A program made the translations under genes and the position numbers. A stretch of DNA of 63,996 nt, filler included, from Guillardia theta CCMP2712 (lineage: Eukaryota > Protista > Cryptophyta): assembly GCF_000315625.1 (NCBI RefSeq). It is 7 parts of 7 records of this genome, joined end to end, with 100 filler letters (N's around TTAATTAATTAA, not from the genome) between each part and the next. Parts side by side here need not be neighbours in the genome. Positions count along the whole stretch, not along the records: positions 10,607 to 16,646 come from NW_005434205.1; 6 more parts are not named here. One strand, written 5' to 3'. Shown here one piece after another: positions 10,607 through 16,646 of this stretch (the stretch's first letter is position 1; each line of letters starts with the position of its first letter). The notes under the pieces are model-generated. The model was not told the origin of the DNA. It was given only the letters and a program-made list of their open reading frames with translations, and made no database searches.

Positions 10607-10705
10607 AGTAAAAGATGAGGCTAACTACGGGTATGATGAAGAGTCTAAAATCCATATCCGCATGATCATCGATGATGGCTGGCATAGTGACACGGACGCC
10701 GCGTA

Positions 10706-13700
10706 TCATCCCACCCCTGGCGACCCGCTTCCCAGCGGCTGCCCAGGCAACGTGAACCCTGGGATCCTCGAGACAAAAAGAGCCGCCATGCTAATTGCCA
10801 TAAAGCTCCAAAGACTCTTCTGAACCTGTGAGATGCTCGCCACTACCTGCGATCAGTTTGTCACGAATGAGCTAACACATTCATCGGTCTCAGTCAGTCG
10901 CCTCGGAAACACCCAGCGAGACTCTCAAGTACAGGATGCACCGCCGAATACCTTGTCGATACTCGCCTCAACCTGCGATCCTTTGTCACATGATCGTATC
11001 CGACAAACATCCCTCAGGCTACGCTGACACTGGTATACCTTGTCAAACCTGCTATTGTTGCTTTCCTGCACCTGCGATCGTTGTCACCGTTCAACCAGCG
11101 AGAAGGGAGCTTGAACACTGACGATCAGGTTCGAAAATACCTCGCAAAATCTGTCCTCTAGATGCACAAGACTCGTCTGAACCTGTGAGATGCTCGCCTC
11201 AACCTGCGATCCTTTGTCACATGATCGTATCCGACAAACATCCCTACTACGCTCGGACACTGGTATACCTTGTCAAACCTGCTATTGTTGCTTTCCTGCA
11301 CCTGCGATCGTTGTCACCGTTCAACCAGCGAGAAGGGAGCTTGAACACTGACGATCAGGTTCGAAAATACCTCGCAAAATCTGTCCTCTAGATGCACAAG
11401 ACTCGTCTGAACCTGTGAGATGCTCGCCTCAACCTGCGATCCTTTGTCACATGATCGTATCCGACAAACATCCCTCAGGCTACGCTGACACTGGTATACC
11501 TTGTCAAACCTGCTATTGTTGCTTTCCTGCACCTGCGATCGTTGTCACCGTTCAACCAGCGAGAAGGGAGCTTGAACACTGACGATCAGGTTCGAAAATA
11601 CCTCGCAAAATCTGTCCTCTAGATGCGCAAGACTCGTCTGAACCTGTGAGATGCTCGCCTCAACCTGCGATCCTTTGTCACATGATCGTATCCGACAAAC
11701 ATCCCTACTACGCTCGGACACTGGTATACCTTGTCAAACCTGCTATTGTTGCTTTCCTGCACCTGCGATCGTTGTCACCGTTCAACCAGCGAGAAGGGAG
11801 CTTGAACACTGACGATCAGGTTCGAAAATACCTCGCAAAATCTGTCCTCTAGATGCACAAGACTCGTCTGAACCTGTGAGATGCTCGCCTCAACCTGCGA
11901 TCCTTTGTCACATGATCGTATCCGACAAACATCCCTCATGCTACGCTGACACTGGTATACCTTGTCAAACCTGCTATTGTTGCTTTCCTGCACCTGCGAT
12001 CGTTGTCACCGTTCAACCAGCGAGAAGGGAGCTTGAACACTGACGATCAGGTTCGGAAATACCTCGCAAAATCGTTCNNNNNNNNNNNNNNNNNNNNNNN
12101 NNNNNNNNNNNNNNNNNNNNNNNNNNNNNNNNNNNNNNNNNNNNNNNNNNNNNNNNNNNNNNNNNNNNNNNNNNNNNNNNNNNNNNNNNNNNNNNNNNNN
12201 NNNNNNNNNNNNNNNNNNNNNNNNNNNNNNNNNNNNNNNNNNNNNNNNNNNNNNNNNNNNNNNNNNNNNNNNNNNNNNNNNNNNNNNNNNNNNNNNNNNN
12301 NNNNNNNNNNNNNNNNNNNNNNNNNNNNNNNNNNNNNNNNNNNGCTCGCCTCAACCTGCGATCCTTTGTCACATGATCGTATCCGACAAACATCCCTACT
12401 ACGCTCGGACACTGGTATACCTTGTCAAACCTGCTATTGTTGCTTTCCTGCACCTGCGATCGTTGTCACCGTTCAACCAGCGAGAAGGGAACTTGAACAC
12501 TGACGATCAGGTTCGAAAATACCTCGCAAAATCTGTCCTCTAGATGCACAAGACTCGTCTGAACCTGTGAGATGCTCGCCTCAACCTGCGATCCTTTGTC
12601 ACATGATCGTATCCGACAAACATCCCTCAGACTACGCTGACACTGGTATACCTTGTCAAACCTGCTATTGTTGCTTTCCTGCACCTGCGATCGTTGTCAC
12701 CGTTCAACCAGCGAGAAGGGAGCTTGAACACTGACGATCAGGTTCGAAAATACCTCGCAAAATCTGTCCTCTAGATGCGCAAGACTCGTCTGAACCTGCA
12801 AGGCCGACACCCTTCGTCAACGTGTGTGATCAAACATTTTGGTTCACTGGCAGCACTCCGAGCGGCGCTCATCACCTGGTCCATCGAGCTGAAGAGATTT
12901 CTGCATGGGGTGTAGATGAGAAAGATTGGTACTCCTGATTTCCCGATGAGTATCGCTTCTTTGTGTTCTCTCCATCTGCTCAATTGCAATCACTTACTCA
13001 GTGGCCCCAGCATGTACTGAGCTTACCTTGCCAATATATTTACCGAGTTTCTCTTGAAGATTTCTTTGTTCCCGTTGACAAACACTCCCATTGCCTTGAT
13101 CACGACGTTGGTCTTGTGAATCCGATTCCGAAGGGCATATGCTCGATCCAGCTGATACATCTTTTCAAGTATACAGCTCGGGCTTTCAGTTATCTCGAAG
13201 TGGAAACACTCCCCTCGCTCAAGACGTATGTCGCTGAGGCATTCGGCGGCGGATGTCGTAGCCTGACCATCTTCATTGCTGAGGCAGACGATGCTCTCAC
13301 TGTCATTCAAGTCCACGACACGATTGAAGATGCTGTCCAGATGAACCGGCCCATCTCGTACTTTGACATACAGGTCTAATTCGAAGTAGTGGCCCTTGCT
13401 GTATTGCTTCTGCTTTTGATCGATACCACTGAGAGAATGGATCGAGAACCTCTTGCGCAGGTTTGTCCTGTACTCCGTGCTGTTCACATGTTGCAGGGCC
13501 GCTATGTCGTTGGAGTCTCTCAAGAAGAACCTCCTGCACATCATGGTCGCCGGGACATGAGCGAGTTGCGAGTAAAGCTGATTAGCGAAGTAGTCCCGCG
13601 CAGAGACGAGGTTGAGCTGAACCTCCTCCCAGTGCGGCAGCTCGTGAGGCTCCAAGTTGCTCATGCTGGGGGAGCTGGTGCCCGCCGGCGACTCCCCTGA

Positions 13701-13712
13701 CCCCTCTGGCAT
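10706..13712 (-). CDS. Copy 1: multi-exon protein with a putative PD-(D/E)xK-like head, an exon-repeat coiled-coil stalk and a C-terminal hydrophobic segment (~560 aa if 8 modules)
   Basis: Exon 1 13712-13027, intron 13026-12976, exon 2 12975-12876, intron 12875-12796, exon 3 12795-12754. Then alternating 33-nt (VQESNNSRFDK) and 63-nt (VEASISQVQTSL[V/A]HLEDRFCE) exons, a 21-nt exon 10972-10952, and last exon 10846-10706 ending TGA. All junctions checked are GT..CAG and in frame. Confidence 0.75.
10952..12795 (-). repeat. 230/231-bp tandem array (7 sequenced units plus about 1 in the gap); each unit is exon-intron-exon-intron
   Basis: Anchor ACCTGCGATCCTTTG at 10971, 11202, 11432, 11663, 11893, 12354 and 12584. 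The 231- and 230-bp variants alternate. Confidence 0.95.
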
Positions 13713-14092
13713 TGCCACAAACTTTTTCCAAGGCGCGGGAAACTGAAGTAAATCCCACCCTACCCCTGCTGATCGTTCGGAATCCTACCAGAGGTGCTCT
13801 CTTGGAGGGGGTGGTGGTGGGAGGAGGAGGGACTCGGGAGAGCTATCAGAACATTCATAGAACAGGTTTTCGCTGCCTCGTCCCTCTGGCTGAGGCGGAT
13901 TTGTTGGTACGAACATCACTCTTGTGGTGACTCACGGCCCTCTTTGACTCTCCCAGTCTGAGTGATTTGTCGGCATGTATGAGTCATAGGCATAGTAAAA
14001 AGATGAGGCTAACTACGGTAAGATGAAGAGTCTAAAATCCATATCCGCATGATCATCGATGATGGCTGGCATAGTGACACGGACGCCGCGTA

Positions 14093-15702
14093 TCATCCCA
14101 CCCCTGGCGACCCGCTTCCCAGCGGCTGCCCAGGCAACTTGAACCCTGGGATCCTCGAGACAAAAAGAGCCGCCATGCTAATGCCATAAGCTCCAAAGAC
14201 TCTTCTGAACTGTGAGATGCTCGCCACTACCTGCGATCAGTTTGTCACGAATGAGCTAACACATTCATCGGTCTCAGTCAGTCGCCTCGGAAACACCCAG
14301 CGAGACTCTCAAGTACAGGATGCACCGCCGAATACCTTGTCGATACTCGCCTCAACCTGCGATCCTTTGTCACATGATCGTATCCGACAAACATCCATAC
14401 TACGCTGACACTGGTATACCTTGTCAAACCTGCTATTGTTGCTTTCCTGCACCTGCGATCGTTGTCACCGTTCAACCAGCGAGAAGGGAGCTTGAACACT
14501 GACGATCAGGTTCGAAAATACCTCGCAAAATCTGTCCTCTAGATGCGCAAGACTCGTCTGAACCTGTGAGATGCTCGCCTCAACCTGCGATCCTTTGTCA
14601 CATGATCGTATCCGACAAACATCCCTACTACGCTGACACTGGTATACCTTGTCAAACCTGCTATTGTTGCTTTCCTGCACCTGCGATCGTTGTCACCGTT
14701 CAACCAGCGAGAAGGGAGCTTGAACACTGACGATCAGGTTCGAAAATACCTCGCAAAATCTGTCCTCTAGATGCGCAAGACTCGTCTGAACCTGCAAGGC
14801 CGACACCCTTCGTCAACGTGTGTGATCAAACATTTTGGTTCACTGGCAGCACTCCGAGCGGCGCTCATCACCTGGTCCATCGAGCTGAAGAGATTTCTGC
14901 ATGGGGTGTAGATGAGAAAGATTGGTACTCCTGATTTCCCGATGAGCATCGCTTCTTTGTGTTCTCTCCATCTGCTCAATTGCAATCACTTACTCAGTGG
15001 CCCCAGCATGTACTGAGCTTACCTTGCCAATATATTTACCGAGTTTCTCTTGAAGATTTCTTTGTTCCCGTTGACAAACACTCCCATTGCCTTGATCACG
15101 ACGTTGGTCTTGTGAATCCGATTCCGAAGGGCATATGCTCGATCCAGCTGATACATCTTTTCAAGTATACAGCTCGGGCTTTCAGTTATCTCGAAGTGGA
15201 AACACTCCCCTCGCTCAAGACGTATGTCGCTGAGGCATTCGGCGGCGGATGTCGTAGCCTGACCATCTTCATTGCTGAGGCAGACGATGCTCTCACTGTC
15301 ATTCAAGTCCACGACACGATTGAAGATGCTGTCCAGATGAACCGGCCCATCTCGTACTTTGACATACAGGTCTAATTCGAAGTAGTGGCCCTTGCTGTAT
15401 TGCTTCTGCTTTTGATCGATACCACTGAGAGAATGGATCGAGAACCTCTTGCACAGGTTTGTCCTGTACTCCGTGCTGTTCACATGTTGCAGGGCCGCTA
15501 TGTCGTTGGAGTCTCTCAAGAAGAACCTCCTGCACATCATGGTCGCCGGGACATGAGCGAGTTGCGAGTAAAGCTGATTAGCGAAGTAGTCCCGCGCAGA
15601 GACGAGGTTGAGCTGAACCTCCTCCCAGTGCGGCAGCTCGTGAGGCTCCAAGTTGCTCATGCTGGGGGAGCTGGTGCCCGCCGGCGACTCCCCTGACCCC
15701 AT
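14093..15702 (-). CDS. Copy 2 of the same gene with only two repeat modules (~370 aa)
   Basis: Near-identical to copy 1 (ORF 15019..15708 vs 13023..13718) with the same splice sites. Units are 228 bp, at about 14350 and 14580. Three 1-nt deletions in the last exon restore the frame. Confidence 0.7.
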
Positions 15703-16646
15703 TGCCACAAACTTTTTCCGAGGCGCGGGAAACTGAAGTAAATCCCACCCTACCCCTGCTGATCGTTCGGAATCCTACCAGAGGTGCTCTCTTGGAGGGG
15801 GTGGTGGTGGGAGGAGAAAGGGACTCGGGAGAGCTACCAGAACATTCATAGAACAGGTTTTCGCTGCCTCCGAGGCTCGTCCGAGGCTCTTTGGCTGAGG
15901 CGGATTTGTTGGTACGAACATCACTCTTGTGGTGACTCACGGCCCTCTTTCAACGACTCTCCCAGTCTGAGTGATTTGTCGGCATGTATGAGTCATAGGC
16001 ATAGTAGAAAGATGAGGCTAACTAGGCATGGACGCCGCGTATCATCCCACCCAGCGGCTGATCTCTTGGTCTTGGTGAGGATGCGGCTCGTCGTCCGATC
16101 ATTGCGCACTGATGGCCCAGTGGCGTGCCGCATGGCGGGATAGCAGGGGGGGGGGACTCAGGGAAGAGGAGGAAGAGGAGGGATATTCGCGTGTACGGTA
16201 TGCACCCCTTCCCGTCGCCGAATCTCCGGGGCCGAGGCTTCCTCTACCCTTCCCCTCCCTCTCGTCCTCCCTCCTCCTTCCCTCACTGTCTCCCTCTCAC
16301 CTTCTCGCACTGCGGCAGGAGTAGGACATGTACGTCGGTCACCAGGGTTGCGACTCGGGCCAACCCTCCCCGGTCATACCCAGGCCTGCCCCAGGCCGCG
16401 CGGCCTCTTGTACGCATTGCTTCGATCAAAGATTCATTCCTGAATGCGCCAATGGCGCCAGGCAGACGAGCCGTCAGGATCCTCCTCCCCGTCTTGGGCC
16501 CTGCTGCATCTTCGCGGTCGTCTTACTGGCTCTGCAGCCAGTCAGGTGTTGTCATGGCACCAAGTTCTGAGACAGTCAGTCACCTGCACTCCGCCATGTT
16601 GTCCTTAAGAGCGTCAGAGTCAGGGATGAGACCTCCTAGAACGGGC

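What the first reader, a model, noticed from the sequence alone, without database searches (positions are those of the whole stretch)
10706..15702. A 'satellite' that is a tandem exon-intron cassette array tuning coiled-coil length
Seen: on the minus strand each 228-231-bp unit parses as a 63-nt exon (VEASISQVQTSLVHLEDRFCE), a 69-nt GTAT..GATCGCAG intron, a 33-nt exon (VQESNNSRFDK) and a 63-66-nt GTAT..GATCGCAG intron. All these introns are phase 0. The length differences between units fall inside the second intron and never in the exons. The array splices in frame to upstream exons and to a terminal exon with a stop. Copy 1 has at least 7 modules and the adjacent copy 2 has 2. Inference: a 32-aa (3 heptads + 1 hendecad) coiled-coil stalk whose length can vary by unequal crossover and potentially by frame-preserving exon skipping. 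The ORF track cannot show this gene.
Basis: partly seen in the sequence, partly recalled or inferred. Interest (0 to 1): 0.9.

Follow-up and report, generated by a model that had tools for sequence, protein, structure and literature searches.

The report
Spliced exon–intron repeat array gene
The 230-bp "satellite" is a run of real, spliced exon–intron units inside two neighbouring genes of the alga Guillardia theta. Each unit adds 32 amino acids to a helical stalk, a known kind of gene architecture that the public genome annotation already models as exons.

Summary
The piece is the whole 6,040-nt scaffold JH993433.1 of Guillardia theta CCMP2712, and it carries two tandem paralogous genes on the minus strand. 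Each 228-231-bp unit parses as a 63-nt exon, a 69-nt intron, a 33-nt exon and a 63/65/66-nt intron, all GT..AG and phase 0.

Contigs from two RNA-like public runs are spliced exactly at these borders, while a DNA run keeps the introns. JGI already models the units as exons (GUITHDRAFT_122836 and _122835).

A third paralog, GUITHDRAFT_113919, has one such unit with homologous introns. So a pre-existing exon–intron segment was amplified in tandem.

- **Module count.** The same locus on the main scaffold JH993035.1 has 2+2 modules and no gap, so "2 versus at least 7" may be an assembly matter. RNA junction depth (about 4-5 junctions per transcript) favours the long array.
- **Last intron.** The 105-nt intron before the hydrophobic C-terminal exon is retained in every RNA contig seen, which puts a stop eight codons in.
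- **Coiled coil.** It is plausible but only moderately supported.

The N-terminal domain looks like a restriction-endonuclease (PD-(D/E)xK) fold. Verdict: a new member of a known kind, of moderate interest.

The parts
15023..15702 (-). Upstream gene (GUITHDRAFT_122836), exon 1. It encodes most of the N-terminal domain.
   Evidence: ORF. 100% match to G. theta proteins. RNA-like contigs cover it.
14972..15022 (-). Upstream gene, intron 1 (51 nt, GT..AG).
   Evidence: Joint 14971->15023 in X1 and X2, absent from DNA run X15. Frame check.
14872..14971 (-). Upstream gene, exon 2 (100 nt, ends ...NLFSSMDQ).
   Evidence: Same in the JGI models.
14792..14871 (-). Upstream gene, intron 2 (80 nt).
   Evidence: Joint 14561->14870 (308 = 80 + 228) is the repeat-shifted placement of this intron. 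The 25 letters beyond the joint belong to exon A, not exon B.
14357..14791 (-). Upstream gene, cassette array. It runs partial exon A (42 nt), intron 69, exon B, intron 63, exon A, intron 69, exon B, intron 63.
   Evidence: Parse. Joints 14678->14748 and 14450->14520, plus loose ends at 14358, 14418, 14586 and 14646, show both intron types spliced.
14336..14356 (-). Upstream gene, 21-nt exon (VEASIDK).
   Evidence: Joined to exon B in an X1 contig (loose end at 14358).
14231..14335 (-). Upstream gene, 105-nt last intron (GTAT..GATCGCAG). It is retained in all RNA-like contigs seen, and read through it gives VFGGASCT then a stop.
   Evidence: X1 record 1 (14050-14358) and X2 record 16 (14210-14358) are contiguous across it. 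Translation.
14093..14230 (-). Upstream gene, terminal exon with the hydrophobic tail and stop. On this scaffold it carries three 1-nt deletions that are absent from the main scaffold and from all laid contigs.
   Evidence: table 4 (14181, 14187, 14209).
13027..13712 (-). Downstream gene (GUITHDRAFT_122835), exon 1.
12976..13026 (-). Downstream gene, intron 1 (51 nt).
   Evidence: By identity with the upstream gene.
12876..12975 (-). Downstream gene, exon 2.
12796..12875 (-). Downstream gene, intron 2 (80 nt).
12344..12795 (-). Downstream gene, cassette array before the gap (2 exon-B copies).
12078..12343 (.). Assembly gap of 266 N. It falls inside an exon A and is in register for one extra unit.
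10973..12077 (-). Downstream gene, cassette array after the gap (5 exon-B copies). 66- and 65-nt second introns alternate, giving the 461-bp higher-order period.
10952..10972 (-). Downstream gene, 21-nt exon (VEASIDK).
10847..10951 (-). Downstream gene, 105-nt last intron.
10706..10846 (-). Downstream gene, terminal exon (VVASISQVQKSLWSFMAISMAALFVS...) and its stop at 10706-10708.

Best explanation
The piece is nuclear DNA of the cryptophyte Guillardia theta CCMP2712 (scaffold JH993433.1). It holds two tandemly duplicated protein-coding genes on the minus strand.

The '230-bp satellite' is the 3' half of each gene. It is a head-to-tail array of a unit made of two symmetric phase-0 exons (63 + 33 nt) and two short GT-AG introns (69 and 63-66 nt). 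The spliceosome removes both introns from every unit (shown). Each unit therefore adds 32 residues of a proline- and glycine-free helix whose hydrophobic residues sit at 1, 5, 8, 12, 15, 19, 22 and 30.

This stalk follows a 260-residue N-terminal domain that models as a restriction-endonuclease-like (PD-(D/E)xK) fold. That domain defines a small family, mostly of G. theta paralogs, and every member carries some heptad or 11-mer repeat tail.

The array arose by tandem duplication (unequal crossover or replication slippage) of a pre-existing segment, exon A - intron - exon B - intron. Paralog GUITHDRAFT_113919 has this segment in single copy, with homologous introns at the same places (inferred from the comparison). 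A later two-unit (461-bp) duplication and a whole-gene duplication followed.

Because the unit's coding length is 96 nt and all borders are phase 0, any gain or loss of units keeps the frame. Stalk length can therefore change freely.

Whether it really differs here (2 versus at least 7-8 modules) is not settled. RNA junction depth favours a long array in at least one expressed copy.

The last 105-nt intron is mostly retained in the RNA examined. The main product there would end soon after the array, and the hydrophobic C-terminal tail would need the minor spliced form.
For: Identity: the exon-1 ORF is 100% identical to G. theta proteins, and the piece equals JH993433.1 reversed.

Parse: all units are GT..AG, phase 0 and in frame from the ATG to the stop.

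Splicing:
- Joints of 69 nt at 14450->14520 (X1) and 14678->14748 (X2), of 51 nt at 14971->15023, and of 80 nt (shown as 308).
- Loose ends at 14358, 14418, 14586 and 14646 that join exon B to exon A.
- All of these have CT..AC ends on the plus strand. None appears in DNA run X15, whose contigs run through the introns.

Coding constraint:
- Indels among units lie only in the second intron.
- Against paralog 3, exon length differences are 0, 0, +33 and -24 nt, while intron differences are +7, -5, -8 and -11 nt.

Origin: paralog 3 has one unit with homologous introns.

Long array:
- The exon A|B junction contig has depth 668 against 122 for the intron-1 junction in X2, and 63.6 against 15 in X1.
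- Three second-intron variants occur only on this scaffold.

Stalk:
- The 32/9 hydrophobic harmonic is reached by 948 of 20,000 shuffles.
- ABC_tran_CTD (E 3.5e-10) and HSBP1 (E 1.6e-9) score above their Pfam cut-offs on the multi-module model.
- Homologues' tails hit coiled-coil families.

Head domain:
- The AF2 model built on 26 sequences has pLDDT 86.9.
- The best structural matches are almost all PD-(D/E)xK nucleases: Can2 Z 6.0, VC1899, McrC, NucS, XisH, Card1 and BglII.
- D113, E173 (invariant), K184 and Q187 are conserved.
Against: - X1 and X2 are labelled RNA only by a guess. Their RNA nature is inferred from the joints themselves.
- The on-record RNA run X22 gave only 13 reads.
- The main scaffold of the same assembly shows 2+2 modules.
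- This small scaffold has base errors in the terminal exon of the upstream gene. Its long array could be misassembled or allelic.
- DNA contig depth over the modules was uninformative, with holes at 14395-14532.
- In X1 the 3' end is 5 times deeper than exon 1, so depth ratios are rough.
- The coiled-coil signal is modest (p about 0.05). The single-sequence AF2 model is poor (pLDDT 43.7).
- Structural Z scores of 4-6 lie below the level at which a match is safe. The canonical lysine position of the (D/E)xK motif is Thr175.
- The tail's hydrophobicity is borderline (Kyte-Doolittle 19-residue mean 1.39). The intron before it is retained in all RNA contigs seen.
Confidence: 0.8

Rival explanations
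1. The 2-versus-at-least-7 difference is an assembly matter. JH993433.1 would be a redundant leftover or alternative assembly (or an allele) of the locus on JH993035.1. Either the main scaffold collapsed the array, or the small scaffold over-extended it. The two paralogs need not differ in stalk length.
For: - Both flanks of the piece match the main scaffold. There are no differences from 16646 to 14398 and only 4 small ones before the arrays.
- The main scaffold has 2+2 modules and no gap.
- The small scaffold carries three 1-nt deletions that no DNA or RNA contig supports (table 4).
- The array contains an N gap.
Against: - Second-intron variants (65-nt type, TCTG, CATG) exist only on the small scaffold, so reads exist that the 2+2 version cannot hold.
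- RNA junction depth implies about 4-5.5 A|B junctions per transcript, against 2 expected for 2+2.
Confidence: 0.35
2. The units are a non-coding satellite that only by chance parses as exons and introns. The genes would end before the array.
For: - The units are 97-99% alike, so there is little room to see purifying selection within the array.
- The 63- and 66-nt introns are open in frame.
Against: - Spliced joints at both intron types appear in RNA-like contigs and not in DNA.
- Contigs run from the array into the terminal exon.
- Exon lengths differ from the third paralog only by multiples of 3, while intron lengths do not.
- The related transcriptome protein P0009 carries the homologous exons.
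Confidence: 0.03
3. The repeat is not a coiled-coil ruler. It would be an amphipathic or disordered repeat tail whose copy number is neutral, a by-product of unstable tandem DNA. The main protein would be the soluble form that ends 8 codons into the retained last intron.
For: - The last intron is retained in all RNA contigs of X1 and X2, and this gives an early stop.
- In the third paralog, transcriptome protein P0002 retains the last intron while P0009 splices it.
- The hydrophobic periodicity is weak.
- Tails of family members differ freely in sequence and length.
Against: - The hydrophobic tail is conserved in frame between paralogs, with only a 3-nt indel inside the hydrophobic stretch.
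- Every family member keeps some heptad or 11-mer helical tail after the conserved domain, which suggests the tail is needed.
Confidence: 0.3

Closest known systems
[quoted passage not shown]
   Same: These are protist genes in which a short exon plus its intron is the tandem repeat unit. Intron phase is constant, the number of units is very variable, and the paper attributes this to unequal crossing over.
   Different: There the unit is one 90-bp exon with phase-2 introns, it encodes a leucine-rich repeat, thousands of genes are involved, and a retrotransposon is implicated. Here the unit has two exons (63 + 33 nt) with phase-0 introns and encodes a helical heptad-type stalk. It is seen in one small subfamily, and no transposon was seen.
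Human LPA kringle IV type 2 repeat (my own knowledge, not tested here)
   Same: A multi-exon unit (two exons plus introns) is repeated in tandem within a gene. Every unit is in frame, and copy number sets protein size.
   Different: The LPA unit is about 5.5 kb and encodes a folded kringle domain. Its copy-number polymorphism is proven in populations. Here the unit is 230 bp and polymorphism is unproven.
Paralog GUITHDRAFT_113919 (P0042, locus L004)
   Same: It has the same N-terminal domain and the same intron positions, with homologous intron sequences. It also has the same exon B and a hydrophobic C-terminal exon.
   Different: It has a single unit. Its length variation comes instead from a 21-bp heptad repeat (VEERxGK) inside the exon, with 2 copies in the genome model and 3 and 4 in transcriptome proteins.
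PD-(D/E)xK (restriction-endonuclease-like) nucleases such as Can2/Card1, McrC, NucS, BglII
   Same: The N-terminal domain's best structural matches are almost all of this fold. An Asp on one strand and a Glu on the next are conserved.
   Different: There is no sequence-level match (Pfam, PDB, PADLOC and PHROGs all blank for the domain). Z is only 4-6. Thr175 takes the place of the motif lysine, with a conserved Lys184 on the next helix.

Membership tests
Tandem exon-intron cassette arrays (coding multi-exon tandem repeats) | The repeat unit contains whole exon(s) and whole intron(s) with splice signals. | tested here: met
   Every unit has two GT..AG introns and two exons.
Tandem exon-intron cassette arrays (coding multi-exon tandem repeats) | The unit's coding length is a multiple of 3 with one constant intron phase. 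| tested here: met
   63 + 33 = 96 nt, and all introns are phase 0.
Tandem exon-intron cassette arrays (coding multi-exon tandem repeats) | The introns of the units are removed in RNA. | tested here: met
   Joints and loose ends in X1 and X2 that are absent from DNA run X15. Caveat: the RNA label of X1 and X2 is a guess.
Tandem exon-intron cassette arrays (coding multi-exon tandem repeats) | The number of units varies between alleles or paralogs. | tested here: inconclusive
   2 versus at least 7 on this scaffold, 2+2 on the main scaffold. RNA depth favours more than 2.
Alpha-helical coiled coil | Heptad or hendecad spacing of hydrophobic core residues in a helix-compatible sequence. | tested here: met
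   Hydrophobic residues at 1, 5, 8, 12, 15, 19, 22 and 30. No Pro or Gly. The 3.56-residue harmonic is reached by 4.7% of shuffles. Coiled-coil Pfam families score above their cut-offs on P0006.
Alpha-helical coiled coil | A confidently predicted or observed long helix, and oligomerisation. | tested here: inconclusive
   The single-sequence AF2 model gives helices 250-295 and 300-339 at pLDDT 50-70 only. No multimer prediction was possible.
PD-(D/E)xK nuclease superfamily | The restriction-endonuclease-like alpha/beta core fold. | tested here: inconclusive
   The model has pLDDT 86.9. The top VIA matches are nearly all of this fold but at Z 4-6. Foldseek finds nothing with E below 0.49.
PD-(D/E)xK nuclease superfamily | The catalytic D ... 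(D/E)-x-K motif. | tested here: inconclusive
   D113 (23 of 25 sequences) and E173 (26 of 26) are conserved. The x-K position is Thr175. K184 (25 of 26) sits on the following helix.
Tail-anchored membrane proteins | A single hydrophobic segment close to the C-terminus. | tested here: inconclusive
   The segment FMAISMAALFVS... has a 19-residue Kyte-Doolittle mean of 1.39, which is borderline. It is conserved in paralog 3.
Tail-anchored membrane proteins | The mRNA actually encodes the tail. | tested here: not met
   In X1 and X2 the intron before the tail exon is retained, giving a stop, and no spliced joint was seen. Only two runs were examined, and they are contigs rather than reads.

The most novel reading that the evidence does not exclude
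The array is a truly hypervariable, intron-bearing coding minisatellite. It would give a cryptophyte-specific, nuclease-like head domain a stalk of variable length. Retention or removal of the last intron would switch the protein between a soluble form and a membrane-anchored form, making an adjustable 'spacer' on a membrane-tethered enzyme.
Probability: 0.2. Interest if true: 0.55.

Novelty: new member of a known kind. Interest (0 to 1): 0.35.

Why it matters
It is a clean, small example of protein length growing by tandem duplication of a pre-existing exon-intron segment. The single-unit ancestor state is still present in a paralog 95 kb away, and a second paralog-level route to the same end exists (a 21-bp heptad repeat inside an exon).

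It also flags three practical problems in the G. theta reference:
- A redundant scaffold, with a locus whose repeat number the assembly does not resolve.
- Gene models that skip a 42-nt exon which the RNA includes.
- A terminal exon on this scaffold with three single-base errors.

The protein family itself is uncharacterised: a nuclease-like head, a helical repeat tail and an optional hydrophobic end.

Tried and rejected
- **My first intron 1 (126 nt).** RNA joints and the JGI models show a 51-nt intron and a 100-nt exon 2.
- **Exon skipping.** The only long joint (308 nt) is the 80-nt intron 2 placed one repeat further on. JGI's skip of the 42-nt exon is contradicted by the RNA contig, whose 25 letters past the joint are exon A sequence.
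- **DNA copy number from Logan contig depth.** Holes over the repeat core made it uninformative.
- **Searches for the N-domain.** Pfam, PADLOC, PHROGs and the PDB sequence search returned nothing, or only coiled-coil noise on the tails.
- **Foldseek against PDB.** No significant match.
- **Single-sequence AF2 of the 358-aa model.** Poor.
- **Longer multi-module proteins in the protein database.** None found. Only P0001 and the third paralog came back.
- **Exact exon-B pattern in metagenome contigs.** No match.
- **Other family paralogs.** P0039 is intronless and P0029 has about one intron. Introns inside the repeat are therefore special to this subfamily.
- **Two ENA contigs of a 1-2% divergent relative.** They are genomic and break off in the first unit, so they give no count.
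- **Literature.** No paper on these genes was found.
- **Joined spliced protein.** I did not build or search one from the window. Window exons were searched singly by reference, and whole-protein queries used only database proteins that the tools returned.


Full report
**What the piece is.**
The exon-1 ORF (window 15023-15702, minus strand) is 100% identical to hypothetical proteins of Guillardia theta CCMP2712. The piece, reverse-complemented, is letter for letter the whole 6,040-nt scaffold JH993433.1 of assembly GCA_000315625.1. JGI called two genes on it:
- GUITHDRAFT_122836 (P0004, 355 aa).
- GUITHDRAFT_122835 (P0006, 495 aa, flagged partial).

**The observation.**
Tandem Repeats Finder gives periods of 228-231 bp at 96-99% match, plus a 461-bp higher-order period. 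On the minus strand every unit parses as:
- exon A, 63 nt;
- an intron of 69 nt;
- exon B, 33 nt;
- an intron of 63, 65 or 66 nt.

All introns run GTAT..GATCGCAG and all are phase 0.

Variation across nine units:
- Exon B is invariant.
- Exon A has one variable site (Val/Ala).
- The 69-nt intron has two substituted sites.
- All gapped columns lie in a 12-nt hotspot of the second intron.

Three of the second introns are 65 nt long, which excludes coding. The upstream gene has 2 exon-B copies. The downstream gene has 7, plus the gap.

**The gap.**
- The sequence ends 12 nt into an exon A (12344) and resumes 15 nt before an exon-A end (12077).
- The missing part is 36 nt plus n whole units. Each unit adds 96 coding nt, so the frame holds for any n.
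- The 266 N equal 36 + 230, in register for one extra unit.
- The bases just after the gap differ from the consensus by substitutions only, with no indel.
- No sequence bridges the gap. JGI's model jumps from exon B to exon B.

**RNA evidence.**
I laid one raw RNA-seq run (X22), two runs guessed to be RNA (X1, X2; Logan contigs) and one 2011 run that behaves as DNA (X15) on 14050-16100.

X1 and X2 show these joints, all with CT..AC ends on the plus strand (GT..AG on the minus strand):

| Joint | Size | Run(s) |
|---|---|---|
| 14971->15023 | 51 nt | X1, X2 |
| 14561->14870 | 308 nt | X1, X2 |
| 14678->14748 | 69 nt | X2 |
| 14450->14520 | 69 nt | X1 |

- The 308-nt joint is the 80-nt intron 2 placed one repeat (228 nt) further on.
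- Short loose ends at 14358, 14586, 14418 and 14646 are the ends of exon B and the starts of exon A. The second intron type is therefore spliced too.
- None of these joints is in X15, whose contigs run straight through the introns (records 9 and 10).
- The 25 letters beyond the intron-2 joint are exon A sequence. The RNA thus includes the 42-nt exon (VQTSLAHLEDRFCE) that all four JGI models skip.
- X22 gave only 13 reads, all near the 3' end, so it adds little.

**Two further RNA observations.**
- First, X1 record 3 (14574-14675, depth 20, against 38 for the spliced form) retains the 63-nt second intron. That intron is open in frame and would add 21 residues.
- Second, and more important, X1 record 1 (14050-14358) and X2 record 16 (14210-14358) are spliced at the preceding intron but run uninterrupted through the 105-nt last intron (14231-14335). 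No joint or loose end for that intron was reported.
- Read through, the frame stops after eight codons. In these runs the main message therefore does not encode the hydrophobic C-terminal exon.
- That exon is nevertheless conserved in frame in a paralog. In that paralog the public transcriptome proteins include both a spliced form (P0009) and an intron-retaining form (P0002).

**How many modules?**
- The same locus lies on the 443-kb scaffold JH993035.1 (L001) as GUITHDRAFT_113957 and _113956.
- The first 2,249 nt of the piece have no differences from it, and only four small ones precede the arrays. Both genes there have 2 modules and there is no gap.
- Three of those four differences are 1-nt deletions in this scaffold's upstream terminal exon. 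No DNA or RNA contig supports them (table 4), so this scaffold has base errors.
- On the other side, three second-intron variants occur only here.
- In X2 the exon A|B junction contig has depth 668, against 122 for the intron-1 junction. In X1 the figures are 63.6 against 15.
- That is 4-5.5 junctions per transcript, where 2+2 predicts 2 and 2+8 predicts 5.
- I therefore favour a real long array that the main scaffold collapsed, at about 0.6. An allele or a misassembly is not excluded. Long reads would decide.

**Origin.**
- A third paralog, GUITHDRAFT_113919 (P0042, L004), lies about 95 kb away on the main scaffold.
- It has the order exon A-like, intron, exon B, intron, terminal exon once only, with recognisably homologous introns.
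- Between it and the downstream gene, exon lengths differ by 0, 0, +33 and -24 nt. Intron lengths differ by +7, -5, -8 and -11 nt, at similar substitution levels.
- This is the signature of coding exons. It also shows that the introns pre-date the amplification.
- Its own length variation is a 21-bp heptad repeat (VEERxGK) inside the exon: 2 copies in the genome model, and 3 and 4 in transcriptome proteins.

**The protein.**
Residues 1-262 have no Pfam match. They define a family of 28 cluster representatives, many of them G. theta paralogs.

- In all members inspected the domain is followed by some heptad or 11-mer repeat tail, of unrelated sequence and variable length.
- Those tails hit generic coiled-coil families.
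- With a 26-sequence alignment, AF2 gives pLDDT 86.9 and pTM 0.85.
- Foldseek finds nothing significant. An exhaustive alignment against PDB representatives lists almost only PD-(D/E)xK nucleases at Z 4-6: Can2, VC1899, McrC, NucS, XisH, Card1, BglII, HamA and FokI. ESM Atlas neighbours include DUF4143 and YhgA-like transposases.
- D113, E173 (invariant), K184 and Q187 are conserved.
- I read this as a probable restriction-endonuclease-like fold. Activity is unknown.

The 32-residue module has no Pro or Gly, and its hydrophobic residues have coiled-coil spacing. The signal is modest, reached by 4.7% of shuffles. The multi-module model P0006 passes the Pfam cut-offs of two coiled-coil families.

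**Comparison and verdict.**
Arrays in which a short exon plus its intron is the tandem unit are known:
- Tetrahymena LRR genes have a constant intron phase and a variable number of units, attributed to unequal crossing over (PMC6564038).
- Human LPA is a further case (my own knowledge).

This case is a two-exon, phase-0, helical-stalk version in a cryptophyte, with the single-unit state preserved in a paralog. It is a new member of a known kind and is already annotated as exons. The "tuning" story rests on a module count that the assembly itself contradicts, and on a terminal splice that the RNA does not show.

Whole-protein queries were database proteins returned by the tools.

Noticed in passing
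window 14183-14211: The upstream gene's terminal exon on this scaffold has three single-base deletions, each shortening a run of 2-3 identical bases. Together they shift and then restore the frame, giving FRRVFGAYG in P0004. The main scaffold and all DNA and RNA contigs carry the undeleted version, so these are probably sequencing errors in JH993433.1.
   Followed up: yes
window 14750-14791 and 12754-12795: All four JGI gene models (P0001, P0004, P0005, P0006) skip the 42-nt exon VQTSLAHLEDRFCE. The RNA-like contig joins exon 2 to this exon, so the deposited proteins are probably 14 residues short.
   Followed up: partly
window 14585-14647: The 63-nt second intron, and its 66-nt versions, are open in frame. 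They would add a 21-22 residue insert with four cysteines. One X1 contig (14574-14675) retains it at about half the depth of the spliced form.
   Followed up: partly
window 16474-16646: By the gene calls on the main scaffold, the first 173 nt of the piece (minus strand) are the 3' end of a Peptidase_S41 gene (L001 3291-7236).
   Followed up: partly
window 13902-16024 versus 10607-14015: The whole gene with its upstream region is tandemly duplicated, with a period of about 1,990 nt outside the arrays and about 98% identity. After the second copy about 190 nt of the repeat recur, then unique DNA follows (loose end at 15907 in DNA and RNA contigs).
   Followed up: partly
window 14050 downstream; X1 record 1: A 901-nt RNA-like contig runs from the array through the stop and several hundred nt into the intergenic region. 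This suggests a long 3' UTR or read-through.
   Followed up: no
L004 3007-3259: The JGI model of the third paralog starts with a 33-bp in-exon tandem repeat (PAPVAAKTLIL, about 6 copies). It is absent from the transcriptome proteins, which start at MSNLEP. The 5' part of the model may be wrong.
   Followed up: no
P0002 and P0009 versus P0042 and P0006: The transcriptome proteins have an exon-1 part identical to the downstream gene here, but exon 2 and the tail of the third paralog. They are either chimeric transcript assemblies or a fourth, unannotated copy.
   Followed up: no
P0012 and P0036 (GUITHDRAFT_105177 and _105176): These adjacent family members have two and three whole copies of the nuclease-like domain in one protein (422 and 634 aa). 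This is another tandem length difference in the family, or a model artefact.
   Followed up: no
window 16267-16312: A purine-rich 24-bp imperfect repeat lies in the region upstream of the first gene.
   Followed up: no
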